Virus record (IMG/VR): IMGVR_UViG_3300010334_000023
Span: 1-64,000 of that record
Direction: 5' to 3' (one strand)
DNA length: 64,000 nt
The translations under genes were made by a program, and so were the position numbers. Positions 10,424-58,880 of this stretch are shown here, in pieces. Positions within the stretch are counted from its first letter, which is position 1; each line of letters begins with the position of its first letter. Under the pieces are notes generated by a model that had not been told where the DNA came from, searched no databases, and was given only the letters and a program-made list of their open reading frames with translations.

Positions 10424-11488
10424 TCAAAAGTCAATCCAATAGTTGGTCTTGGCCTTGGTGATGCGAGTCAGCACCAGCGTGCCATCCTCGTTGGTGAACT
10501 GGAACTTGCCTTCTCTGGGATCAACCTTGTTGAGGTCGCGCCCATTCCAGCTGTAGGTGACCCAACCGTCCTGCTCACCGGCATCGTCGTAGTCGCGCAC
10601 CTCCACTTCGATGTCACCGCCTAGGGGATTGCCGCTCCACTTGCTGTTGTTCTCCACGTCCTTGGCTTCCACTGGAGCATTGTCCACGATCAGCTGCACC
10701 ATGTACTCGTCGTTGTTGGCAAACTCCGGCTTGGTGTTCAGCATGCGCATGGCTTCCTGAGCAGTCTCACCATAGCGGTTCATTTCTTCGATCAGTGCTT
10801 TGAGCATGTCAAAGTTGAACGCGCTGAACAGGCTGGCGATCTTGCACACGCTGTCCTTGTGCTGTGGGCTAGCAAGGTTGTCATCGCAGTATTCCTCGAT
10901 GAACTCCATGGTCAGACCAGAGTAGTCCAAGCTGTAGTAGATGCGACCAGGACGATTGCGCATGTGGCTGTCAATTCGCCACTTGTCATTGCAGGTCAGC
11001 ACAAACAGCGTCTTGCTGGGAAACACCCCGTCCAACAGCGTCAGCATCTGTTCCTGTGACTCTCTGTCATAGACCTTTTCAAACTCGTCAAACACTACGA
11101 TGCAGGGCTGCTGGATGTCTTGGATCAGCTTGTTGAAAGCATCGCCCTTCCAGGGATGGTTGATCACAATGGTAGGGATGCCCTGCTCAGCGCCCTTGAT
11201 GCTCAGCATCTTGCTCAGCAGCGTCTTGCCTGAACCCTTCTCGCCCGTGAGCAGCACGCCTGTGGCAGCTGGGCGATCGTTGAAGGTATAGAGTATGCGA
11301 TCTGCGGTTTTCAGCGTGTCACCGTAGATCTTCTTGGGGGTGGTGAAAGCATCAATCTCTTCCAAGTAGAGGTTGCCAAACTGGTCAGCCTTGATGATGT
11401 AGTTGCCCGCAGGCAACACGCTATGCAGATCCATGGCAGCGTTGGCTGCCAATCGCCATGTGTTGCCATTGCGTATGAAATGTGTCAT
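10424..11488 (-). CDS. AAA+ ATPase
   Basis: GEKGSGKT Walker A, VVFDEFEK Walker B, LLDG, NRPGRI. Confidence 0.85.
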   Translation of the reverse strand: MTHFIRNGNTWRLAANAAMDLHSVLPAGNYIIKADQFGNLYLEEIDAFTTPKKIYGDTLKTADRILYTFNDRPAATGVLLTGEKGSGKTLLSKMLSIKGAEQGIPTIVINHPWKGDAFNKLIQDIQQPCIVVFDEFEKVYDRESQEQMLTLLDGVFPSKTLFVLTCNDKWRIDSHMRNRPGRIYYSLDYSGLTMEFIEEYCDDNLASPQHKDSVCKIASLFSAFNFDMLKALIEEMNRYGETAQEAMRMLNTKPEFANNDEYMVQLIVDNAPVEAKDVENNSKWSGNPLGGDIEVEVRDYDDAGEQDGWVTYSWNGRDLNKVDPREGKFQFTNEDGTLVLTRITKAKTNYWIDF

Positions 11489-11549
11489 TGCATCAGTCTC
11501 TCTGTTTTGATGGTTGAATGTATCACGATAGCGCGGAAATGTCAAGGCA

Positions 11550-26179: not shown

Positions 26180-26859
26180 AGCGGGTAAATGGTGCCGTAG
26201 TTTGCGGCTGCCAACAGCTCACGTGTCTTGGCAGTCTTGCGTCCGGTTACCTGCAGGGCTGGACGTATCTTGCGGCTGGCATTGGCCGTGGCATGAGGCA
26301 CGTTAGGCCAATCAAACACATGCGCATCGCCTGCGCGCCACCTGTCATAGACCAAGTTGCCATACATGTAGAACTGTCCAGGTTCCCAGTCCTCTAGCAT
26401 CACCGTGAGCCTTATCACGTTGTCAGGTTCAGCATCCACGTCCCAGAGCTTGTCTATGTGCATGTTAAACATGTCACCCAGCTTCTGCACATGAACTCGT
26501 ATCTTTGGCTGCTCTATGGCAAAGAAATCAACCATCTTGCTGAGAACTGGATAGTCACTCAGCTGATCCCACATGTGAGTTATGGTCATCTTGGGATCAC
26601 CGCCTACCACAGCTATGTCTCTTTCCTCTTGGGCCAGCATGGGGCTATAACGCAGATCGTTTGGTCCGTAGAACTTGCGAGTCTCCCAGTTCATGGGCAG
26701 TGCTTTGGTCTTGATGTCGTCAATCTCAGCCTGCCAGTCCCCGGTAAATCTACCAAGCTTGGTGAACCAATCGCCCGGTCTGTCCTCGCGCCACTTGTCA
26801 AAATGGTAGTTGCTGCGCTCAACTGTCCAAGCCCAGCTGCTGTCATGTTCCTGTGTCAT
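26176..26859 (-). CDS. 2OG-Fe(II) oxygenase-like cupin protein
   Basis: H.Q..G.MFNMHID...W.AGD...FDW.N.PHATAN...R..LQ.TG. Confidence 0.7.
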   Translation of the reverse strand: MTQEHDSSWAWTVERSNYHFDKWREDRPGDWFTKLGRFTGDWQAEIDDIKTKALPMNWETRKFYGPNDLRYSPMLAQEERDIAVVGGDPKMTITHMWDQLSDYPVLSKMVDFFAIEQPKIRVHVQKLGDMFNMHIDKLWDVDAEPDNVIRLTVMLEDWEPGQFYMYGNLVYDRWRAGDAHVFDWPNVPHATANASRKIRPALQVTGRKTAKTRELLAAANYGTIYPL

Positions 26860-27866
26860 CTGTCTGTGTCTTTCTCTATGAACAATCTCTGTGCGTTCTT
26901 GTAGGCTATCTGCTCTGCCACATCAGCGTCAAGCTGTCCTAGTATCTCGCGCCAAGTGTCAATGATGATGTCATAGTGCTGCCAGCGCCAGTCCTTGTGG
27001 CAATCAGTGGCAAACAGCATGCGATCGGGCCACTTGGTCATGATGTGTCGCCACTGGTAATTTATCCTGCCATCGAGGTCTATCACCGGAGAACCCAGCT
27101 TGCTCTGTTTCTGCTTGCTGGTTGGTCCCGCGCCATTGGGCCAGAAACCTCGCCAAGTGTACCACCACCGCCCCACGTGTATGAGATCCTTCTTGCTCAG
27201 CAACAGATACACGTTGTCAAAGCGGTTAAGCAGCTCATTGCTGTAGACGGCACGTCCAAACCCACAGTGCGCGATCATAAAGTTGATGCGGGGGTATCGC
27301 TCGAACAGTGCGAAGAATCCAGGATGGTCTCGCTCCCAGTCATAGAACTCCCAGTGAAGCATCACCGGAATGCCCTTGCCGTCCAGTGCGTCCATGAGAT
27401 CAAGGAAGTTAGGCGACAAGGGATTGATGTAGCGTTCACCACGCAGCGTGGTTTCGTTGCCCCACTTGCCCGGATGCTTGTCGGCATGCACGCACTGCAG
27501 TTCGCCTATGAAGTGATAGAGGCCGCTGTCGCAGCCAGCTATGGCCTGCTCCACGAAACGCGCCCTGATATCATCCCTGTGATCAAAGCCTTTGGGTGCT
27601 CCCAGCACGAACATGTCAGGATATCGATTCTTGATATCTATCATGTGTTGCGTGCTGTCGTGTGGCTGCTGCTGCCTAGCAAAGATCATCATCTGGATGA
27701 CGTTGTGCTGGTGCATCTTGGCCACAACGTCCTCGCCGGATCTGGTAGCACTGAACTGCATCATGGCATCTATCAGAGGACCTTCATACTTCTTGCGCGG
27801 TCCACAGAAAAGACCGTTCAACTTGATCCTCAGATATTTCGCCGCGTTCTTGACGTCTGACCACAT
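26856..27866 (-). CDS. amidohydrolase_2/TatD-like TIM-barrel metallohydrolase
   Basis: LIDA, IGEL, PVMLH, IAHCG, PDRMLFATD, IAY.NA.RL. Confidence 0.75.
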   Translation of the reverse strand: MWSDVKNAAKYLRIKLNGLFCGPRKKYEGPLIDAMMQFSATRSGEDVVAKMHQHNVIQMMIFARQQQPHDSTQHMIDIKNRYPDMFVLGAPKGFDHRDDIRARFVEQAIAGCDSGLYHFIGELQCVHADKHPGKWGNETTLRGERYINPLSPNFLDLMDALDGKGIPVMLHWEFYDWERDHPGFFALFERYPRINFMIAHCGFGRAVYSNELLNRFDNVYLLLSKKDLIHVGRWWYTWRGFWPNGAGPTSKQKQSKLGSPVIDLDGRINYQWRHIMTKWPDRMLFATDCHKDWRWQHYDIIIDTWREILGQLDADVAEQIAYKNAQRLFIEKDTDR

Positions 27867-27888
27867 GTTAGCAGTTCCTATTTAAGGT

Positions 27889-29346
27889 TTATATAGCCAA
27901 GGCAGCTGGCCGCGGAGCAGTGAGATAGCTCACCACCACGTTGGCCGCCGCGCTGCCGATCACCTGCACTCCTGTGCCTATGACCATTATCACTGGTCCA
28001 CCACCGAACAGCAAACCATACACATAGATCGGGCTGCCAATGCAGATTCCAACGAATGCGCCAGCATAAAAGCCCCAGCGAGTGATGAAGTTGCGTGCCA
28101 GCAGTGCGATCACATAGTTGCCAGCCAGTGACAGTCCTATGGCCTTGCCAAACATGAAGAAAGTACCGATATCCAATCCGGGTATGTTTGCCATGGCGAT
28201 ACCAACCGCTGCCAGTATGAACATGGCAGCGAAACCCCAGCGCATTGGGTTGTCGGCCTTGGCCGCGTCGTGGAAATCATTGCTGCTGATGGTAGCACTG
28301 GTCATCAATATGGTATCGATCAAGCTAACCAAACCGCTGAAGACCACTGCTAGATACATCAGTGCCAACCAAGGGCCTACCACGGTGGCCATCATGATGA
28401 TGTTGATGAACTGTGTGTTTGGACCAGTGACACCAACATGCATGCCAGCAGCCAAGAATCCAAGACCGCCGCCAATGATAGGCAGTGGCAACCAATAAAA
28501 TGGAGCCAAGATGAAAGCAGGGATGATGGTGTTCTTTTTCTGGCTTAGAGCATTCTCATAGAACGCATGATCAGTCCATGGTCCCATGAAATGTCCTACC
28601 ACGGTTGGCACACCAAAGCCCATTAACACACCCAGGGCGAAGCTGTTGCCCCAGAGAGTGGTACCATTACCCGTGACGCCTCCCAGTCCTGCCCACACCG
28701 GCTCGAGACCAGTGGTTCCGAAAACCGTGATGGCTATGATAGCCATACCAATCCAGATAACACCAATCTTGACCATGTCAGTGATGAACGTAGCCTTGAT
28801 GCCGCCGCGCAAGGTATAAACCAGCGCTATGGCTACTAGGAACACGCTGGTGATCAGCGGGCTCAGCCCTGTCAAGAACTCCACGCTCTTGCTGCCCGCG
28901 AACAGGCTGAACGTGACCTGCTGCACAGTACTTACGGTTATCTGTGCAACTATGATGAACTGCACGATCTTGCCCAGACGTGTGCCCAGGAACTGGCTGA
29001 GTGTATAGCCATCTGGATACTTGTTGCGGAAGTAATTCACACCAAAAGCAAATATCATCAGCGTCAAGAAGTTACCGATGCTGAAATAGAACAGTCCAGT
29101 TAAACCATTGGTATATGCCTGTTGTGCTGCTACAAACAGCCCCGGAGCCTGTATCCATGCTGCTCCTGCTCCCATGCTGCCCTGCAGCCAGCCTATCTTG
29201 CGATTGGCCACAAGGAAGGATTCCTTGTCTTTGTTGTATCCCCTGCTGTACCAGCTGGTCACAGCAAATATGAACAGAGCATAGGCCGCAATGACAGTGA
29301 AACCTGTCATTGGACTGAACATTGGGAACATGTGCGCGATATCCAT
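27889..29346 (-). CDS. sodium:solute symporter (SSS family)
   Basis: About 13 hydrophobic segments, FLVANR, YTL.GG.KA...TD, S..D motifs. Confidence 0.85.
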   Translation of the reverse strand: MDIAHMFPMFSPMTGFTVIAAYALFIFAVTSWYSRGYNKDKESFLVANRKIGWLQGSMGAGAAWIQAPGLFVAAQQAYTNGLTGLFYFSIGNFLTLMIFAFGVNYFRNKYPDGYTLSQFLGTRLGKIVQFIIVAQITVSTVQQVTFSLFAGSKSVEFLTGLSPLITSVFLVAIALVYTLRGGIKATFITDMVKIGVIWIGMAIIAITVFGTTGLEPVWAGLGGVTGNGTTLWGNSFALGVLMGFGVPTVVGHFMGPWTDHAFYENALSQKKNTIIPAFILAPFYWLPLPIIGGGLGFLAAGMHVGVTGPNTQFINIIMMATVVGPWLALMYLAVVFSGLVSLIDTILMTSATISSNDFHDAAKADNPMRWGFAAMFILAAVGIAMANIPGLDIGTFFMFGKAIGLSLAGNYVIALLARNFITRWGFYAGAFVGICIGSPIYVYGLLFGGGPVIMVIGTGVQVIGSAAANVVVSYLTAPRPAALAI

Positions 29347-29429
29347 TCTTTTCTCCAGATTATTTGATCATCACCGAGATGATATATGCTATATATGTAA
29401 AAATATCGGCTCTAGTGGAAGAAATCAAT

Positions 29430-30203
29430 ATGAACAGAAGAATAAACGAGCATCTGGTGAAAAATCTCAAGGCCACGTTCAATTTAGAGCGCTGGCGCGA
29501 GATAAACGAGCAAATCAGCAGAGAAACGCTGCTGGAGAGACTGCCATGGACCAGCAAGCGCAGAGAGAAGTTCACTCAGATGCTAGCCAGCACCTTTGGT
29601 GTCGCTGCTGAGCTGCGCGGCACGGTGGCAGAACTGACCAACAGCCTGGATCAAGCCTACTGTGAGCATTTCTGGCAGAAAGTTTGGCAGCCGCGTACCG
29701 AGAATTACACCTATACTGGTTGGCAGGCAGTTGATGAGATACTGAGCAGGAATCCAAGGTCAGTGTTGGACGTTGGCTGCGGTTATAACCAGTTCAAGAC
29801 CAAGATACCAAACCTAGTCGGCATAGACAAGTACAACCCTGCTGCTGACTACATGGTCGACATCTTGGACTTTGATGTCGACCCTGAAAGCTATGATGCT
29901 GTCATGGTATTTGGTAGCATAAACTTTGGCGACTATGAGGATGTGGCCTGTAGGTTTGCCAAGGTCTTTGAGCTCACTGCGCCTGGTGGCAGGATATATG
30001 TACGAGCCAATCCCGGCTACAGCCACCCCACTGGCCCATGGATAGACATATTTGCCTGGGACTTTGCCACAGCTCATCGCGTGGCCAAGGACAACAATGC
30101 CACTATGTTGACGTTCAAGCATGACCAAGATCAGCCACAGGATAGCAGCGTTGATCCGGGTCACGGCCAAGGTAATCGTCTTTATTTTGTCTATGAGAAG
30201 TGA
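29430..30203 (+). CDS. class I SAM-dependent methyltransferase with N-terminal helical (ACP-like?) domain
   Basis: VLDVGCG, GID, YDAV..FGSINFG, PGGRI. Confidence 0.8.
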   Translation: MNRRINEHLVKNLKATFNLERWREINEQISRETLLERLPWTSKRREKFTQMLASTFGVAAELRGTVAELTNSLDQAYCEHFWQKVWQPRTENYTYTGWQAVDEILSRNPRSVLDVGCGYNQFKTKIPNLVGIDKYNPAADYMVDILDFDVDPESYDAVMVFGSINFGDYEDVACRFAKVFELTAPGGRIYVRANPGYSHPTGPWIDIFAWDFATAHRVAKDNNATMLTFKHDQDQPQDSSVDPGHGQGNRLYFVYEK

Positions 30204-30204
30204 G

Positions 30205-30535
30205 TGATGGGTTTATTCTGTTTCCAAGGAAACCCATCGAAAACTCATTGAGGTTACGCCGCTAGGCGAATCTCAGATGCAACGAAGTTGTCGTTTGCAG
30301 TTAGAAAATTGGACAATCCGGTTACCCGGAGGCGTGCCTAACCTGCTGACTCCTGCTACCCTTTACACGTCTGTCGATCCTATTTCGCCCCCATCAAAGA
30401 TACACACCTAAAGCTAGAATGCCTCATAGGGTCACGAAGCAACTAGGGACTTCAACCCTCGCATGTATCTATGGTGGAGGCGCCGGGTACCGCCCCCGGG
30501 TCCAGACCGCTTATTACGATGCTATCAACATCAAC
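30205..30535 (-). ncRNA. ssrA: circularly permuted two-piece tmRNA, tag ANDNFVASEIRLAA
   Basis: Acceptor piece ends GACCCGGGGGCGGTACCCGGCGCCTCCACCA (3' end at 30472); intervening segment about 80 nt; coding piece starts GGGGGCGAAATAGGATCGAC at 30392; tag ORF 30298-30254; terminal hairpin 30206-30238. Confidence 0.93.
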
Positions 30536-30759
30536 TAGGTATTTATAGCAGGTTTTTTGTACAAGTCAACCCTGGCCCACTCGCAGCTGCACTTAACATC
30601 GCAGAATCCCAGATTGCGCTGGGCGTTGTGGTACAGTGGTGCCCAATAGCTCCACTGCCGGTCACCACCCTGGAACTGGTGCAGTATGGCTTCGGTTGGC
30701 TTACCGCAATGGCTGCAGGGCTGTCCCTGGATCCAGGTCATAGTTGGAGTTGGCTGCAT
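30535..30759 (-). CDS. small Cys-rich protein (CxxC...FC...C)
   Basis: ORF in operon. Confidence 0.6.
   Translation of the reverse strand: MQPTPTMTWIQGQPCSHCGKPTEAILHQFQGGDRQWSYWAPLYHNAQRNLGFCDVKCSCEWARVDLYKKPAINT
30540..30547 (-). promoter_or_regulatory. T4-type late promoter TATAAATA driving the tmRNA
   Basis: Exact TATAAATA directly upstream of the acceptor piece. Confidence 0.7.
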
Positions 30760-30762
30760 CTA

Positions 30763-31101
30763 TCAAGCAAACTTGCTGGGAATGCCACCTGCGGGTATGC
30801 TCAAGCTGCTGGTCATGCTGAGATAGCTCTTCTTAACGCTGTCTTCTGTCAGAGTGATGAACAGCACATGGCTCAGGCTGACTTTGAGCTTGGCATCCAC
30901 GGTTACCGTGAGAGCGAAGCCAGGCATCAGCTGCATACCCATGCGGCCCGTGTTAGGGTCTACGCTGATCTGCACGCTAAGCGGCTTGTTCATGGTTATA
31001 GTGTTCTCGTCAGCTGCTGTGATCTTGGTGATTATCTCTTCTCCGCTGGTCATCTTGACCGTGCAGATGTCGTCTACCTTCCAGGATTTCTCTATGAGCA
31101 T
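30763..31101 (-). CDS. Sm-like fold phage protein
   Basis: TVKM.SGEEII.K...KPL motif; AGGAG RBS. Confidence 0.6.
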   Translation of the reverse strand: MLIEKSWKVDDICTVKMTSGEEIITKITAADENTITMNKPLSVQISVDPNTGRMGMQLMPGFALTVTVDAKLKVSLSHVLFITLTEDSVKKSYLSMTSSLSIPAGGIPSKFA

Positions 31102-31155
31102 GTTGGTTCTCCTATGCGTGCTTGATTTTACGGTGCAGCCAGCTGTCGCGCAATA

Positions 31156-32109
31156 TTAGCGCGTCTTGACATGGCCGCCACCTGTCAGCGAGCCAACTAT
31201 AGGCTTGTCAGCTTCTGGAGGTATGTCCCAGGCACGGCCCACGAACTTTCTGTATCGATAGTTGTTTAAGAAGTTAGTCTCTGTGAGGTCATGCCCTTGG
31301 TTGCCACCTAGCAGACGCACTCTTCCGGAACTTGGATCAACACCTCGCACAAATGCCACGTGATGGTTTCTGCCGTTCTCGCTGACGAAGATATCATTTC
31401 TACGCCACTGCGTTGGATCATTTATAGATATGGCTTTGGCTCCGCATTTACGTACCCAGTCAGTGGCATAGCTGTCAGCTGTTGCCGTTTTTAGAGCTGG
31501 TATACCCAGCGATTGTAGCACAGTACCAACAAAAGCAGCACACCATGGACACTTATCACCTGGTTCGATTCTCTTGGCATTGGCTATACCAATGGTGTGA
31601 GCATAGCAGTTGAGTATGTTGGGATTGCCGGGTTCAGTCCGCGTCGCTTTCCATTTGCCAGCTTCTCCTTCTGCTTTCAACTGATTGAGATAGCTTTCCA
31701 ACGAGCCCCACAGACCAGCAGCACCACTAGGCGGAGGTGTCACTCCAGATGATATTGGTTCCGGATCACCTGCATGGTCATTTGGATCGCTTGTGCGAGG
31801 TCCAGGAGGAGGAGCTTCTGCTTGTTTTGTTATCGTACCATCATCATTTTCAAGTTCATCTGGATTTGCGTCTGCATATGCCTGGGCAGCCTTATAGTTT
31901 TTGATCTGTTCTGGATTTGGGGCATAATCAGCAACTGGTGGTGGCACTGGTATGTTCAGTGCGGTGAGAAAGCTATTACCAAGCTGGGGCGGTAACCATA
32001 GTGCTGCCTGTACATTGTTGATGAACACGTTTGGGCTATAGTAAACGTCTTCAACACCTGCATCTATGAGGTCCAGTGCCTGTGGAAATCCGCGAGGTAG
32101 GTAAGGCAT
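31156..32109 (-). CDS. TIGR02594/CHAP-domain protein, probably a virion-associated lysin
   Basis: VYYSPNVFIN N-terminus, PWCAAFV, HVAF, LGGNQ. Confidence 0.75.
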   Translation of the reverse strand: MPYLPRGFPQALDLIDAGVEDVYYSPNVFINNVQAALWLPPQLGNSFLTALNIPVPPPVADYAPNPEQIKNYKAAQAYADANPDELENDDGTITKQAEAPPPGPRTSDPNDHAGDPEPISSGVTPPPSGAAGLWGSLESYLNQLKAEGEAGKWKATRTEPGNPNILNCYAHTIGIANAKRIEPGDKCPWCAAFVGTVLQSLGIPALKTATADSYATDWVRKCGAKAISINDPTQWRRNDIFVSENGRNHHVAFVRGVDPSSGRVRLLGGNQGHDLTETNFLNNYRYRKFVGRAWDIPPEADKPIVGSLTGGGHVKTR

Positions 32110-32116
32110 GTTGGTC

Positions 32117-32383
32117 TCACTTGCTCCCTAGATGCTTGACCAGATCATCATGGCCACCGATGTGCGTTCCGTCTAGCCATATCTGTGGCACGGTCTTAGC
32201 ATCTGGACAGACTGCCAGAAGTTCTGTGCGATCGCTCAGTGATTGGTTTGATTTCAGCTTGCGGTCATCACCATTAGTTACGCCGATGATCTTCTCGTCA
32301 TAGGTGATGCTGTGTTTGTCAAACAATGCTTTAGCTCTAGTGCAGTATGGGCAGTGATCTTTGGTGTAAATGATGGCATGCAT
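32117..32383 (-). CDS. glutaredoxin
   Basis: CPYC, TVPQI, IGG. Confidence 0.92.
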   Translation of the reverse strand: MHAIIYTKDHCPYCTRAKALFDKHSITYDEKIIGVTNGDDRKLKSNQSLSDRTELLAVCPDAKTVPQIWLDGTHIGGHDDLVKHLGSK

Positions 32384-32403
32384 CGGCGTATCCTCTGGAA
32401 TAT

Positions 32404-33093
32404 TTATTGGTGTATAACGTGGCTCAATGAACCATCAGCGTTGGTATGTATCCACACAGTACCATCGGGTATAGGCCAACCAGCATATTCATAATGCCAA
32501 GCCCAGCGTGTGACATAAACTACAGTAGGTTCATCACTGCGCACTATACCAAGTCCAAGATCCATCACTGCCTTAGCGAAATATCTATCGCTCCACAGTT
32601 GTTGTCCTGGTTCGACTATCCAGCCTGTCATGGCCGGCAGGGCCTTGCGGGTGAGGAACCAGCTGTTGGTATCCACCATGTTCTCACCGTTGCTTTCCAC
32701 ACGATCAACGTACATTTCACGATCGTCTTGGCTGTGTATGACCCTGGTGGCTATCACACCATCAGCACCGCTCTCAGACAAGATGTCTACCATGAGCTCA
32801 ACGTGATTGGGCTTGAGATAGCAATCAGCGTCGATGAATCCCACAGCATCGTAGCCTTGGCTAAATGCGCTGAGAGCTGCTACTGCCCGCGGTGTCGCGC
32901 CTGCATCGGCGTGAGTTTTAGGTAGCTTGATGTGGTCTACCGTATCAAGCTTGTCTACCATGGGATGAGGGTTACCATCACTTACCAAGATGTGTCGAAT
33001 GTTAGCATAGGTCTGAGCCTTTACGCTGCCATGACACCTGCGCAGAGTGGCAGCATCCTCGGCATGATAGGGTGTGATCATAGCAACACGCAT
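32404..33093 (-). CDS. GT2 glycosyltransferase
   Basis: ITPY, SV..QTY, V.DG, FIDAD. Confidence 0.8.
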   Translation of the reverse strand: MRVAMITPYHAEDAATLRRCHGSVKAQTYANIRHILVSDGNPHPMVDKLDTVDHIKLPKTHADAGATPRAVAALSAFSQGYDAVGFIDADCYLKPNHVELMVDILSESGADGVIATRVIHSQDDREMYVDRVESNGENMVDTNSWFLTRKALPAMTGWIVEPGQQLWSDRYFAKAVMDLGLGIVRSDEPTVVYVTRWAWHYEYAGWPIPDGTVWIHTNADGSLSHVIHQ

Positions 33094-57543: not shown

Positions 57544-58437
57544 TCAGTTCTTGTATAGCACTGATATGAATTGGCCATCATTGACCACCAGTTGTGCTAC
57601 CTCATCTAGGGTGATAGGATAATATTCACCGCTGCTGCCAACCAAACCACTCCAGATTGGTATGTAACCAAAGCGCACCCAGTAGGCATTGAGGTTAAAA
57701 TTGAACAAGGTTGGTCCCGGACCTTGGTTGTTTGAGCTATCAAAGGTGTACATGGGATCTGGCCCAGGTTGTAGCGGCACGAAGAACCATTCACTGGGCA
57801 TTGGATTGCTGTTGGTGAGGCTGGCCTGTATCCAGAACTTGCCAAGGAAGCGGCTCTGATACACAGCTACCGTGTGCATGCCATTGGCACGCTGTGTCTG
57901 AGCATCGCCGGGAAAGCTACCAGTGACGAACATGATGTCATTGTTGTTGCCTATGGGAGTCTGCGTAAACTGTGCCGCTGTGATCTCAGTGGCTGGGATC
58001 ATGGTGCTAAGCACACCATCGATCAGCTCAAAGCTGCCGATGCCGCTTTGGTTCACGTCAGTGTAAAATACCTGACTGATGCCATTGATGTCAGTGTTCT
58101 GTATGGTGTAGTTATAGTAGCCAGCATCTAGATCCTGTGTCTCGCCGGGGTCCAATGTCAGTCGTGCCTTGCCCTGTATGGCCACCGTGATTTCCACAGA
58201 TTTGGTCAAGACCACTTCGCCTGTGAGCTGGTTCTGTATGGTAGCCGTCATGGTGATTCCAACCAAGTTGATTGGCCGGCGCTCGTTGTTGCGCACCACG
58301 AAATCTATGTTGTTGGTCACACCTTTATAGAGCTTGGTATCATAGATTGTCATTGGCCAGTTCACCAGTTGTGGGTTGTCTTGGAACTGCAGTAGCTGCA
58401 CGTATTCCTTGAAGCTGTAGAGAAATACAGTAGGCAT
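57544..58437 (-). CDS. probable virion structural protein
   Basis: LYKGV.N.I.F...N Ig-like pattern; late promoter. Confidence 0.65.
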   Translation of the reverse strand: MPTVFLYSFKEYVQLLQFQDNPQLVNWPMTIYDTKLYKGVTNNIDFVVRNNERRPINLVGITMTATIQNQLTGEVVLTKSVEITVAIQGKARLTLDPGETQDLDAGYYNYTIQNTDINGISQVFYTDVNQSGIGSFELIDGVLSTMIPATEITAAQFTQTPIGNNNDIMFVTGSFPGDAQTQRANGMHTVAVYQSRFLGKFWIQASLTNSNPMPSEWFFVPLQPGPDPMYTFDSSNNQGPGPTLFNFNLNAYWVRFGYIPIWSGLVGSSGEYYPITLDEVAQLVVNDGQFISVLYKN

Positions 58438-58472: not shown

Positions 58473-58484
58473 TATTTATAAATA
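58473..58484. promoter_or_regulatory. palindromic bidirectional late promoter TATTTATAAATA
   Basis: TATAAATA on both strands between divergent genes. Confidence 0.7.
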
Positions 58485-58508: not shown

Positions 58509-58880
58509 ATGTCAGATACCAAACAGGTGCTACAGGAAAAATTCCCGTTCCTCACTGTTATCAGCCATCTAGACAGGGAATATCTTGGCATAGTTCAGCA
58601 CGCAGACAACGCATTCGTGCATCTCTACGTGATGGACAACACCTTCAACGATCCCATGAAGCGAGAGTTCCTAGATTGCGGTGAGATATGGTGGTGGGAA
58701 AGCAACCGCCAGATACCAATCAACATGTTTATTAAGGACAGGTTCGCCAAGTTCAAGAGCTGCTTGCGCATATTCAGCATGAAAGAAACAGTGATACTAC
58801 AGGGACCTGTGCTGAATCTCAAGGATCTCATGAACAAGCGAGTGAAGCGCAGGACCATACAGCTGGTCAAGCACGCTTAG
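58509..58880 (+). CDS. hypothetical protein (FPFL...EYLGIVQ...WWWESNR.IPIN.F)
   Basis: Late promoter and RBS. Confidence 0.75.
   Translation: MSDTKQVLQEKFPFLTVISHLDREYLGIVQHADNAFVHLYVMDNTFNDPMKREFLDCGEIWWWESNRQIPINMFIKDRFAKFKSCLRIFSMKETVILQGPVLNLKDLMNKRVKRRTIQLVKHA

What the first reader, a model, noticed from the sequence alone, without database searches (positions are those of the whole stretch)
30205..30547. Phage-encoded permuted two-piece tmRNA under a late promoter
Seen: acceptor piece first, then an intervening segment closed by an AGATACA/TGTATCT stem, then the coding piece with tag ANDNFVASEIRLAA; TATAAATA upstream; a terminal hairpin shared with the convergent methyltransferase gene. 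Known: permuted ssrA with ANDN...AA tags is typical of Alphaproteobacteria. Inference: the phage supplies its own ribosome rescue. The gene is intact and internal, so it does not look like an attachment-site remnant. No smpB is present in this window.
Basis: partly seen in the sequence, partly recalled or inferred. Interest (0 to 1): 0.65.

Follow-up and report, generated by a model that had tools for sequence, protein, structure and literature searches.

The report
Phage-encoded two-piece tmRNA gene
A large T4-like freshwater phage carries a complete, structurally sound copy of the split "alpha-type" ribosome-rescue RNA (tmRNA); this kind of phage gene was described in 2022, so it is a new member of a known kind, with two unexplained details in its promoter and its spacer.

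Summary
A permuted (two-piece) alpha-type tmRNA gene lies on the minus strand at 30573-30206. It scores 129.8 bits on Rfam alpha_tmRNA and 112.8 bits on tmRNA_permuted, and ARAGORN reads the tag ANDNFVASEIRLAA.

The acceptor stem has the G3:U70 pair, and ACCA is encoded. Thirteen phage tmRNA genes show strong covariation in the helices.

The contig is a 216-kb fragment (about 42% complete) of a jumbo T4-like phage. It is related to Sinorhizobium phage Phosso and Agrobacterium phage Atu_ph07. Phage genes lie on both sides. No integrase, SmpB or tRNA gene was found.

The gene is not a recent host capture. In 401 Alphaproteobacteria only the two universally conserved blocks match. Relatives keep a tmRNA at the same place.

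The promoter is a hybrid. It has a sigma-70 type -35 and an extended -10 that also reads as the T4 late box TATAAATA. This hybrid appears in 15 of 15 related phage genes. A late-type box appears in 85 of 115 viral loci and in 0 of 103 bacterial loci.

Phage two-piece tmRNAs are already published (Buchholz 2022), so this is a new member of a known kind.

One thing is unexplained. The 79-nt spacer that should be discarded is 96-99% identical across otherwise divergent phages.

The parts
30564..30569 (-). -35-like hexamer TTGACT of the tmRNA promoter
   Evidence: Read. It lies 16 nt upstream of TATAAA. TTGAC lies 16-21 nt upstream of the late-type box in 12 of 15 related phage tmRNA genes. It has the same layout as the 5 other sigma-70-like sites of the genome.
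30540..30547 (-). TATAAATA box. It serves as an extended -10 (TGCTATAAA) and also matches the T4-type late promoter consensus.
   Evidence: NTAAATA 7-mers are the most enriched words upstream of genes in the 216-kb record. They precede portal, sheath, tube, adaptor and virion protein genes. The box is present in 15 of 15 kin tmRNA genes. It is in 85 of 115 viral and 0 of 103 bacterial tmRNA loci.
30472..30535 (-). Acceptor piece: P2 5' strands, T-arm, acceptor 3' strand CGCCUCC, discriminator A and encoded CCA (30474-30472)
   Evidence: cmscan alignments and sequence. T-arm and P2 pairs show compensatory changes among 13 phage genes.
30393..30471 (-). Intervening segment (79 nt) removed on maturation. 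It has a 10-bp closing stem (30470-30461 / 30407-30398) and two hairpins.
   Evidence: Fold: -26.5 kcal/mol, z -2.9. With the acceptor stem: -45.3 kcal/mol, z -5.4. All 10 closing-stem pairs covary across kin. The segment is 96-99% identical in five otherwise divergent phage tmRNA genes. Those identity figures were computed on 30472-30394, one base off.
30206..30392 (-). Coding piece: acceptor 5' strand GGGGGCG (G3 at 30390 opposite U 30478), SmpB/D-loop-like block, P2 3' strands, tag frame and 3' hairpin
   Evidence: The acceptor stem and the G:U pair are invariant in 13 of 13 kin.
30254..30298 (-). Tag reading frame: resume codon GCA, ANDNFVASEIRLAA, stop UAA
   Evidence: ARAGORN. The identical tag occurs in the same phage from other samples (L022, L272, L277, L283).
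30201..30247 (-). 3'-terminal stem-loop of the coding piece. The inner 9-bp stem is 30238-30230 / 30214-30206. No U-run follows. It abuts the stop codon (30201-30203) of the convergent ORF.
   Evidence: Fold: -16.6 kcal/mol, z -2.65. No terminator was found by the scan. Relatives and the Rfam consensus keep the loop UUGG(A/C)AACAGAA and compensated stems.
29322..30203 (+). Convergent ORF (293 aa) of unclear function.
   Evidence: Pfam Methyltransf_25 is below its cut-off. No PHROG or NCBIfam hit. The ORF is 99.7-100% conserved in other samples.
30535..30759 (-). Upstream 74-aa Cys-rich ORF whose 3' end contains the tmRNA promoter
   Evidence: No family assignment.

Best explanation
This is a functional, phage-owned ssrA gene for an alpha-type two-piece tmRNA, in a jumbo T4-like freshwater phage.

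Inferred mechanism:
1. A precursor of about 330 nt starts near 30534. That is 6 nt after the TATAAATA box, at the first base of helix P2. It ends after the 3' hairpin, near 30206.
2. The promoter combines a sigma-70 -35/extended -10 with a T4 late box. The RNA could therefore be made both early, by host holoenzyme, and late, by gp55-RNA polymerase.
3. The precursor folds so that the acceptor stem is continued by the closing stem of the 79-nt intervening segment.
4. RNase P cuts 5' of G30392, and 3' trimming stops at the encoded CCA (30472). This leaves two RNAs held together by the acceptor stem and P2.
5. Host AlaRS charges the RNA through G3:U70. Host SmpB and EF-Tu deliver it to stalled ribosomes.
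6. Translation resumes at GCA and adds ANDNFVASEIRLAA, a tag ending in LAA that marks proteins for Clp proteases.
7. The phage also encodes a ClpA-like unfoldase with an IGF loop, but no ClpP.

Likely benefit: ribosomes stay free, and amino acids are recycled, while host mRNA is being destroyed.

Shown here: gene identity, structural integrity, covariation, phage context, conservation among phages and promoter motifs. Inferred: transcription timing, processing, charging, tagging and benefit.
For: - Covariance models score far above threshold at full length. ARAGORN reads the tag.
- Identity elements were read directly.
- RNAalifold on 13 phage genes recovers P2, the T-arm, the acceptor stem and the closing stem. 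It finds 31 pairs, 16 of them with double changes.
- 97.5% of cells are paired, against 33-48% when the 3' partners are slid. 0 of 500 shuffles reach the observed values.
- The context is phage on both sides and across the record. The nearest isolates are Phosso and Atu_ph07.
- Phosso has its own unannotated permuted tmRNA.
- Relative L131 keeps the tmRNA between topoisomerase II and the CHAP-grx-GT2-nrdB block. Many T4-like contigs keep it near nrdAB-grx or PhoH-exonuclease.
- No bacterial genome among 401 sampled Alphaproteobacteria, or among 120 named loci, matches beyond the two universal blocks.
- The promoter type is phage-specific.
- No integrase was found.
- A ClpA-like gene is present.
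- The kind is published: Buchholz et al. 2022, PMC9004378.
Against: - There is no direct evidence of transcription, processing, charging or tagging.
- The only RNA data are Logan contigs of one lake metatranscriptome. A 233-nt contig (30211-30443) covers the coding piece plus 50 nt of the spacer. Its depth is like that of neighbouring genes, so DNA carry-over or unprocessed precursor cannot be told apart.
- No SmpB was found in the record or in Phosso, so the rescue system is not self-sufficient.
- Helix P2b has one non-canonical pair.
- The record is only about 42% complete.
- The host is unknown. An alpha-type tmRNA does not prove an alphaproteobacterial host: Melnitz infects OM43.
Confidence: 0.8

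Rival explanations
1. Interference rather than rescue. The phage tmRNA competes with host tmRNA for host SmpB and ribosomes. It replaces the host tag with a phage-specific one, or titrates SmpB. This would redirect the fate of tagged proteins, for example towards the phage ClpA-like unfoldase, or blunt a host response that senses stalled ribosomes.
For: - No phage SmpB exists, so the RNA must draw on the host pool.
- The middle of the tag (FVASEIR) differs from all 120 bacterial tags sampled. Tags vary widely among phages.
- The phage has a ClpA-like gene with an IGF loop.
- Hudson et al. 2014 note that a TLD-only molecule can inhibit tmRNA.
Against: The gene keeps every element needed for full trans-translation: resume codon, open tag frame, stop codon and an LAA end. 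A decoy would need only the tRNA-like domain. The two readings are not mutually exclusive.
Confidence: 0.1
2. Neutral passenger. A host ssrA gene was picked up recently, for example through a temperate phage, and is carried without function.
For: Buchholz et al. raise exchange with a temperate phage as a possible origin. The sequence family is bacterial in origin.
Against: - No close bacterial donor was found in 401 + 120 genomes.
- The gene is conserved with compensatory changes across divergent phages and at syntenic positions.
- The promoter type is phage-specific and was not seen in 103 bacterial loci.
- The gene is 100% identical in the same phage from several lakes and years.
Confidence: 0.05
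3. Attachment-site sequence (attP) or remnant of integration into a host ssrA gene.
For: tmRNA genes are common integration targets (Islander paper listed).
Against: - The gene is full length with both pieces.
- It lies 30 kb inside a T4-like lytic-type genome with phage genes on both flanks.
- No tyrosine integrase was found in 216 kb.
Confidence: 0.01

Closest known systems
Two-piece tmRNA (ssrA) of marine T4-like myophages: OM43 phage Melnitz and pelagimyophages (Buchholz et al. 2022, PMC9004378)
   Same: - Permuted alpha-type tmRNA in a lytic T4-like phage without integrase or SmpB.
- It sits among nucleotide-metabolism genes (nrdAB, thyX, PhoH).
- A sigma-70-like promoter lies directly upstream.
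- Many IMG/VR contigs with that layout carry the same kind of gene.
   Different: - This phage is a freshwater jumbo phage of the Phosso/Atu_ph07 lineage. Shared proteins are about 30-50% identical to the marine group.
- No glutamine riboswitch reached Rfam's gathering threshold in the window.
- No tRNA genes were found in 216 kb.
- A ClpA-like gene is present.
Bacterial alpha-type two-piece tmRNA (Caulobacter; Keiler, Shapiro and Williams 2000, cited; Rfam RF01849)
   Same: Gene order is acceptor piece, spacer, coding piece. It shares G3:U70, the T-loop GGCGGUA, the block GAAAUAGGAUCGAC, an ANDN... tag ending in AA, and the 3' hairpin loop.
   Different: - The promoter carries TATAAATA (0 of 103 bacterial loci).
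- The spacer is 79 nt, against a bacterial median of 35.
- The tag middle is not seen in the sampled bacteria.
- No adjacent or linked smpB.
One-piece tmRNAs of mycobacteriophages (Bxz1 group) and Bacillus phage G (Hudson et al. 2014, PMC4131195)
   Same: Large lytic phages carrying their own ssrA without smpB.
   Different: Those are standard one-piece tmRNAs from Gram-positive lineages.
Unannotated tmRNA of Sinorhizobium phage Phosso (PV764938, 349553-350242)
   Same: This is the nearest cultured relative (topoisomerase II 55% identical). It has a permuted alpha-type gene with TTGACT-N16-TGTAAATA upstream and the same 3' loop motif. Phosso has no smpB.
   Different: Its spacer is 410 nt and its tag is ANDNVSTKVALAA. 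Its neighbours differ (PAAR protein, small hypotheticals), and it is not annotated in the record.

Membership tests
Alpha-type permuted (two-piece) tmRNA | Scores above the curated threshold of the family covariance models over their full length | tested here: met
   RF01849: 129.8 bits against 50, model 1-355/355. RF04321: 112.8 bits against 47, model 1-213/213.
Alpha-type permuted (two-piece) tmRNA | Permuted gene order: acceptor (3') piece, intervening segment, coding (5') piece | tested here: met
   ARAGORN marks the gene as permuted. The order was read on the minus strand.
Alpha-type permuted (two-piece) tmRNA | tRNA-Ala-like domain: 7-bp acceptor stem with G3:U70, discriminator A, CCA end and T-arm | tested here: met
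   GGGGGCG pairs with CGCCUCC, with G30390 opposite U30478. ACCA is encoded. The T-arm has a 5-bp stem and a 7-nt loop. The stem is invariant in 13 of 13 kin.
Alpha-type permuted (two-piece) tmRNA | Tag frame starting at an Ala resume codon, ending in a stop, with a tag C-terminus of the (A/L)AA type | tested here: met
   GCA ... UAA, giving ANDNFVASEIRLAA.
Alpha-type permuted (two-piece) tmRNA | Helices joining the two pieces are kept by compensatory change | tested here: met
   16 of 31 pairs have double changes. 97.5% of cells are paired, against 33-48% in slid controls. 0 of 500 shuffles reach this. The alignment holds phage genes only.
Alpha-type permuted (two-piece) tmRNA | Precursor is cut into two RNAs that stay associated | not testable with these tools
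   Only contigs of one metatranscriptome were available, and they cannot show RNA ends.
Alpha-type permuted (two-piece) tmRNA | Alanylation, SmpB binding and trans-translation activity | not testable with these tools
   No assay was possible. SmpB is absent from the phage record.
T4-type late promoter (gp55-dependent) | TATAAATA box about 6 nt before the start, recurrent before late (virion) genes of the same phage | tested here: met
   The exact box is at 30547-30540. With at most 1 mismatch, 33 of 92 genome-wide sites fall in the 3.7% of sequence space upstream of genes. These sites precede portal, sheath, tube and adaptor genes.
T4-type late promoter (gp55-dependent) | Phage encodes a gp55-like late sigma factor | tested here: met
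   ORF 125788-126645(-): phrog_12791 'sigma factor for late transcription', E 3e-84. phmmer with T4 gp55: E 2e-5.
T4-type late promoter (gp55-dependent) | No -35 element; activity depends on gp55/gp33/clamp, late in infection | tested here: not met
   TTGACT lies 16 nt upstream. None of the genome's 27 late-type sites has TTGAC there. Timing could not be tested.
Sigma-70-type (early) promoter | -35 TTGACA-like and -10 TATAAT-like hexamers 16-18 nt apart | tested here: met
   TTGACT-N16-TATAAA with TG at the extended -10 position. The layout matches 5 other sites of the genome and 12 of 15 kin genes. The generic scanner missed it because it requires T at position 6.
Integration-site (attP) fragment of ssrA | Partial ssrA 3' fragment next to an integrase | tested here: not met
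   The gene is full length. No PF00589 hit in 216 kb.

The most novel reading that the evidence does not exclude
The 79-nt intervening segment may not be disposable spacer. It may be a separately selected RNA module, either a released small RNA or a processing/regulatory element, that moves between co-occurring freshwater T4-like phages as a cassette.

The segment is 96-99% identical in tmRNA genes whose mature parts are only 57-90% identical. Those genes have different tags, and their phages share only 30-38% protein identity with this one. All 11 further carrier contigs recovered (6 IMG/VR, 5 JGI metagenome) look phage-like.

Together with the hybrid early/late promoter found only in phage copies, this would make the phage ssrA locus a two-product gene.
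Probability: 0.15. Interest if true: 0.7.

Novelty: new member of a known kind. Interest (0 to 1): 0.4.

Why it matters
The gene extends phage-borne two-piece tmRNAs from marine pelagimyophage-like phages to a freshwater jumbo phage lineage with cultured relatives on Sinorhizobium and Agrobacterium. One of these, Phosso, carries an unannotated copy. That gives a tractable laboratory system to ask what a phage gains from its own ssrA.

The phage-specific hybrid promoter and the conserved spacer are concrete, testable features. They separate phage copies from bacterial ones. They could improve annotation, since ARAGORN missed several copies, and help tell phage contigs from host contigs.

The specific claim 'a phage encodes a permuted tmRNA' is no longer surprising to specialists.

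Tried and rejected
1. I first judged the late-promoter claim unsupported. TATAAATA occurs only 3 times in the window and 8 times in 216 kb, against about 6 expected. Looking at where the sites lie reversed that view. Five of the 8 are intergenic, 20-35 nt before genes, and NTAAATA words are the most enriched upstream 7-mers.
2. The generic promoter/terminator scan found nothing. It demands T at -10 position 6 and a U-run after the hairpin.
3. blastn of the gene against isolate phages gave only two short hits, so it was not informative.
4. The donor search was negative. A 20-mer from the tag start has no match in 185,579 species genomes. The 120 named alphaproteobacterial loci and the 401 sampled genomes match only the two conserved blocks.
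5. The expression evidence was inconclusive: contigs only, patchy, with depth like the neighbours.
6. An Rfam E-value scan of the spacer found no family. The best other match was Atu_Ti4 at E 6.7.
7. Linked ClpX/ClpP: window ORF 10424-11545 is a generic AAA ATPase. No ClpP was found. A ClpA-like gene lies far away, at 194.6 kb.
8. ARAGORN failed on L131, L016, L042, L050, L025 and Phosso, although Infernal finds full-length genes there.
9. I did not pass the long dot-bracket string to the count of structure pairs. The same controls were computed in Python instead.
Full report
**1. What is there**

The window carries one tmRNA gene, on the minus strand. Infernal against Rfam 15 gives alpha_tmRNA (RF01849) at 30573..30206. 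The score is 129.8 bits against a gathering score of 50, E 4e-35, and the whole 355-position model is matched. It also gives tmRNA_permuted (RF04321) at 30535..30254 with 112.8 bits. ARAGORN calls a permuted tmRNA with the tag ANDNFVASEIRLAA.

Reading the minus strand gives these features:
- Helix P2 5' strand from 30535.
- T-arm 30499-30483.
- Acceptor 3' strand CGCCUCC at 30482-30476, discriminator A, and encoded CCA at 30474-30472.
- A 79-nt intervening segment at 30471-30393.
- The coding piece, starting with GGGGGCG at 30392-30386. The third pair is G:U, the alanine identity element.
- The conserved block GAAAUAGGAUCGAC.
- The resume codon GCA at 30298, 14 tag codons, and UAA at 30256-30254.
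- A 3' stem-loop with arms at 30238-30230 and 30214-30206.

**2. Is the structure under selection?**

I aligned the window's gene with 12 tmRNA genes from other viral contigs. All 12 are full-length Rfam hits of 82-139 bits.

RNAalifold recovers the P2 helix, the T-arm, the acceptor stem and the stem that closes the intervening segment. It predicts 31 pairs, and 16 of them show changes on both sides that keep the pair.

My own controls on the same alignment give the following:
- 97.5% of cells are paired. When the 3' partners are slid by 1-3 columns this falls to 33-48%.
- 16 pairs have double changes, against 3-6 in the slid versions.
- 0 of 500 column shuffles reach the observed values.
- The acceptor stem, with its G:U pair, is invariant.
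- All 10 pairs of the closing stem covary.

The precursor helix formed by the acceptor stem plus the closing stem folds at -45.3 kcal/mol, z -5.4.

**3. What the contig is**

The window is bases 1-64000 of an IMG/VR virus record of 216,498 bp. CheckV estimates it to be 42% complete.

The genes around the tmRNA are phage-like on both sides:
- Upstream, in the tmRNA's orientation: a 74-aa Cys-rich ORF, a 112-aa ORF (phrog_527), a CHAP-domain protein, glutaredoxin, a GT2 glycosyltransferase, and the small and large subunits of ribonucleotide reductase.
- Downstream: a convergent 293-aa ORF, a sodium:solute symporter-like gene, an amidohydrolase, both subunits of topoisomerase II, and T4 RNA ligase 1.
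- Further on in the window: tail fibre-like and virion protein genes and a DnaB-like helicase.

The rest of the record holds a gp23-type capsid gene. It also holds genes for a portal, tail sheath, tail tube, head-tail adaptor, UvsX, ThyX, PhoH and a gp55-like late sigma factor.

By topoisomerase II, the nearest isolates are Sinorhizobium phage Phosso (469 kb, 55% identity) and Agrobacterium phage Atu_ph07 (490 kb, 51%). A genome of that size fits the 42% completeness estimate.

The 216 kb contain no tRNA gene, no SmpB, no tyrosine integrase and no ClpP.

The same phage, at 99-100% identity, appears on other IMG/VR and JGI contigs. It also appears in freshwater and lake metagenome runs from 14 studies.

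**4. Is it a phage gene or a stray host gene?**

Three lines of evidence say it is a long-standing phage gene.

(a) Position is conserved.
- Contig L131 is a diverged relative. Its topoisomerase II is 86% identical, glutaredoxin 74%, GT2 59% and CHAP protein 36%. It has a full-length tmRNA (126 bits) at the same place, between topoisomerase II and the CHAP gene.
- A wider set of contigs has exonuclease, tail-fibre-like gene, nrdA, nrdB, glutaredoxin and then tmRNA.
- About 60 short contigs have PhoH, PD-(D/E)XK exonuclease, tmRNA and then ThyX, DnaB and UvsX. This matches the gene content described for Melnitz-like marine myophages.
- Phosso carries an unannotated permuted tmRNA at 349553-350242, scoring 108 bits, with the tag ANDNVSTKVALAA. 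Atu_ph07 has none.

(b) No donor was found.
- A 20-mer from the tag start has no match in one genome each of 185,579 species.
- In 120 named alphaproteobacterial tmRNA loci, and in 401 evenly sampled Alphaproteobacteria, only two blocks match. These are the universally conserved stretches of about 47 nt (T-arm and acceptor strand) and about 40 nt (start of the coding piece).
- These are samples, so a closer bacterial gene may exist among genomes not searched.

(c) The promoter is phage-specific (section 5).

**5. The promoter**

I first thought the late-promoter claim failed, because TATAAATA is not over-represented: 8 copies in 216 kb against about 6 expected. Position changes the picture.
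- Five of the 8 copies are intergenic, 20-35 nt before a same-strand gene.
- The most enriched 7-mers in the 70 nt upstream of ORFs are all NTAAATA variants. ATAAATA, for example, is seen 21 times against 1.1 expected.
- With at most one mismatch, 33 of the 92 genome-wide sites lie in the 3.7% of sequence space that is upstream of genes.
- The genes behind these boxes encode the portal, tail sheath, sheath stabiliser, tail tube, head-tail adaptor and several virion proteins.
- ORF 125788-126645 is a gp55-type late sigma factor (phrog_12791, E 3e-84) and matches T4 gp55 by phmmer.

So T4-type late promoters are real in this phage, and the tmRNA box matches them exactly.

The tmRNA box also has a TTGACT hexamer 16 nt upstream, and TG at the extended -10 position. 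None of the 27 late-type sites has TTGAC in that place. The layout instead equals the genome's five other sigma-70-like sites, TTGACA-N14-GCTAnTAT.

The combination is conserved. All 15 related phage tmRNA genes have an [A/T/G]TAAATA box 5-12 nt before P2, and 12 of them have TTGAC 16-21 nt upstream of it. Among IMG/VR loci with the alpha-tmRNA core, 85 of 115 have NTAAATA in the promoter zone and 77 have the exact TATAAATA. Among bacterial loci analysed in the same way, 0 of 103 have it.

My reading is a hybrid promoter that could work with host sigma-70 early and with gp55 late. Buchholz et al. classed the Melnitz tmRNA promoter as early. Timing cannot be settled from sequence alone.

A start 6 nt after the box would fall at about 30534, the first base of helix P2. 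This is inference from established knowledge of T4 late promoters.

**6. The 3' end**

The terminal hairpin is real, at -16.6 kcal/mol and z -2.65. No U-run follows it, and the terminator scan found nothing.

Its loop, UUGGAAACAGAA, is shared with the Rfam consensus, with Phosso and with other phage genes. The stems differ in a compensated way. It is therefore a conserved element of alpha tmRNAs themselves, not simply a terminator shared with the neighbouring gene.

The convergent ORF stops at 30201-30203, inside the outer stem. Calling that ORF a methyltransferase rests on a sub-threshold Pfam hit only.

**7. Expression**

One lake metatranscriptome holds 45% of the sampled words of 28000-33000. 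When laid on the region, it gives a 233-nt contig at 30211-30443 with no differences. This is the coding piece plus 50 nt of the spacer.

Contigs over neighbouring genes have similar depth. Nothing covers 30505-30838.

Contigs cannot show RNA ends, and DNA carry-over is possible. Transcription and processing therefore remain unshown.

The DNA runs show joints between about 30392 and 30472 with other letters in between. These come from other organisms' tmRNA genes, which share the two conserved blocks.

**8. Mechanism**

The best-supported reading is a working tmRNA that depends on host AlaRS, SmpB, EF-Tu, RNase P and Clp proteases.

The complete genome of Phosso has a tmRNA and no SmpB, so dependence on host SmpB seems to be the rule in this lineage.

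The record encodes a ClpA-type unfoldase at 194647-196935. Its domains are Clp_N, two AAA modules and the D2-small domain. It matches TIGR02639 ClpA over the full length at 879 bits, below the equivalog cut-off of 993. It has an IGF tripeptide at residue 611, and an IGF loop is what ClpA uses to dock on ClpP. The role of the IGF loop, and the fact that ClpAP degrades ssrA-tagged proteins in E. coli, come from my own knowledge. A functional link between this gene and the tmRNA is inference.

The rivals (competition for SmpB or tag replacement, neutral passenger, attP) are weighed in their own sections.

**9. An unexplained detail**

The intervening segment should be discarded, yet it is the best conserved part of the gene. 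This holds between the window and at least five other phage tmRNA genes (L025, L274, L276, L278, L279).

| Part of the gene | Identity to the window |
|---|---|
| Spacer | 96-99% |
| P2 5' strand | 61-64% |
| T-arm and acceptor strand | 83-90% |
| Start of the coding piece | 57-72% |
| Tag region | 67-73% |
| Upstream region | 51-57% |

The tags differ, and the shared proteins are only 30-38% identical.

All 11 further contigs that hold the spacer's 26-mer (6 IMG/VR, 5 JGI metagenome) look phage-like. They have tRNA genes alongside, or PhoH, exonuclease and ThyX neighbours.

Of the four variable positions in the spacer, three keep the predicted pairs through wobble changes and one breaks a pair.

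Viral spacers are longer than bacterial ones, with a median of 79 nt against 35 nt.

Two explanations are open. One is cassette exchange by recombination through the two universal blocks. The other is selection on the spacer as an RNA with a function of its own. I cannot separate them. The identity figures were computed on 30472-30394, one base off the boundaries given above.

**10. Novelty**

Phage tmRNAs have been known since the Bxz1-type mycobacteriophages and Bacillus phage G.

Two-piece tmRNAs in phages were described by Buchholz et al. 2022. They counted 402 of 18,146 phage genomes with a tmRNA, 53 of them two-piece, and 50 of those from marine or aquatic samples. Of the contigs that cluster with Melnitz, 17 of 47 had one.

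This is therefore a new member of a known kind, in a freshwater jumbo-phage lineage. No paper in the searched library mentions Phosso.

The phage-specific hybrid promoter and the conserved spacer are modest new observations, and they need experiments.

**Housekeeping**

Noticed in passing
L014:1501-2190 (PV764938.1 349553-350242, minus strand): Sinorhizobium phage Phosso has a full-length permuted tmRNA (RF01849 108 bits, RF04321 113 bits, tag ANDNVSTKVALAA). It lies in a 750-bp gap of its GenBank annotation. Its intervening segment is 410 nt, the longest stop-free stretch inside it is 87 codons, and it has no Rfam hit. ARAGORN misses the gene.
   Followed up: partly
window 30393-30471 (minus); L025, L274, L276, L278, L279, L281-L286: The 79-nt tmRNA spacer is 96-99% identical across phages whose mature tmRNA parts, tags and proteins are much more diverged. 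All carriers found look like phages.
   Followed up: partly
G000 194647-196935 (minus) = L008:10647-12935: The phage encodes a ClpA-like Hsp100 unfoldase of 762 aa. It matches TIGR02639 at 879 bits and has Clp_N, two AAA modules and an IGF tripeptide at residue 611. The 216-kb record has no ClpP. It may act on ssrA-tagged proteins together with host ClpP.
   Followed up: partly
window 26856-29346 (minus): Next to the tmRNA, the phage carries a sodium:solute symporter-family gene (PF00474, phrog_20720) and an amidohydrolase (PF04909). This is unusual cargo for a phage.
   Followed up: no
window 58473-58484: Two overlapping TATAAATA boxes on opposite strands (TATTTATAAATA) sit between divergent genes. 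One is a virion structural protein gene (57544-58437, minus) and the other is 58509-58880 (plus). This looks like a bidirectional late promoter.
   Followed up: partly
G000 whole record; L025, L071, L128, L130, L274, L278, L279: There are no tRNA genes in 216 kb of this phage. Related contigs carry one to three tRNA genes (Arg-TCT, Gln-TTG, Ile-TAT) within a few hundred to about 1,300 bases downstream of their tmRNA.
   Followed up: no
L042:9309-9674: One related phage tmRNA, next to nrdA-nrdB-glutaredoxin, scores as beta_tmRNA (RF01850, 106.9 bits) rather than alpha. Phages with this gene layout may therefore carry tmRNAs of more than one permuted lineage.
   Followed up: no
window 1752, 12481, 47283, 59373; G000 97791 (all minus strand): There is a small family of sigma-70-like sites of the form TTGACA-N14-GCTAnTAT. 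Three lie 19-26 nt before genes, including the RNA ligase gene. They are probably the phage's early promoters.
   Followed up: partly
window 30535-30759 (minus): A 74-aa ORF with CxxC and CxxxCxC motifs ends inside the tmRNA promoter. The -35 and -10 elements lie in its last codons.
   Followed up: no
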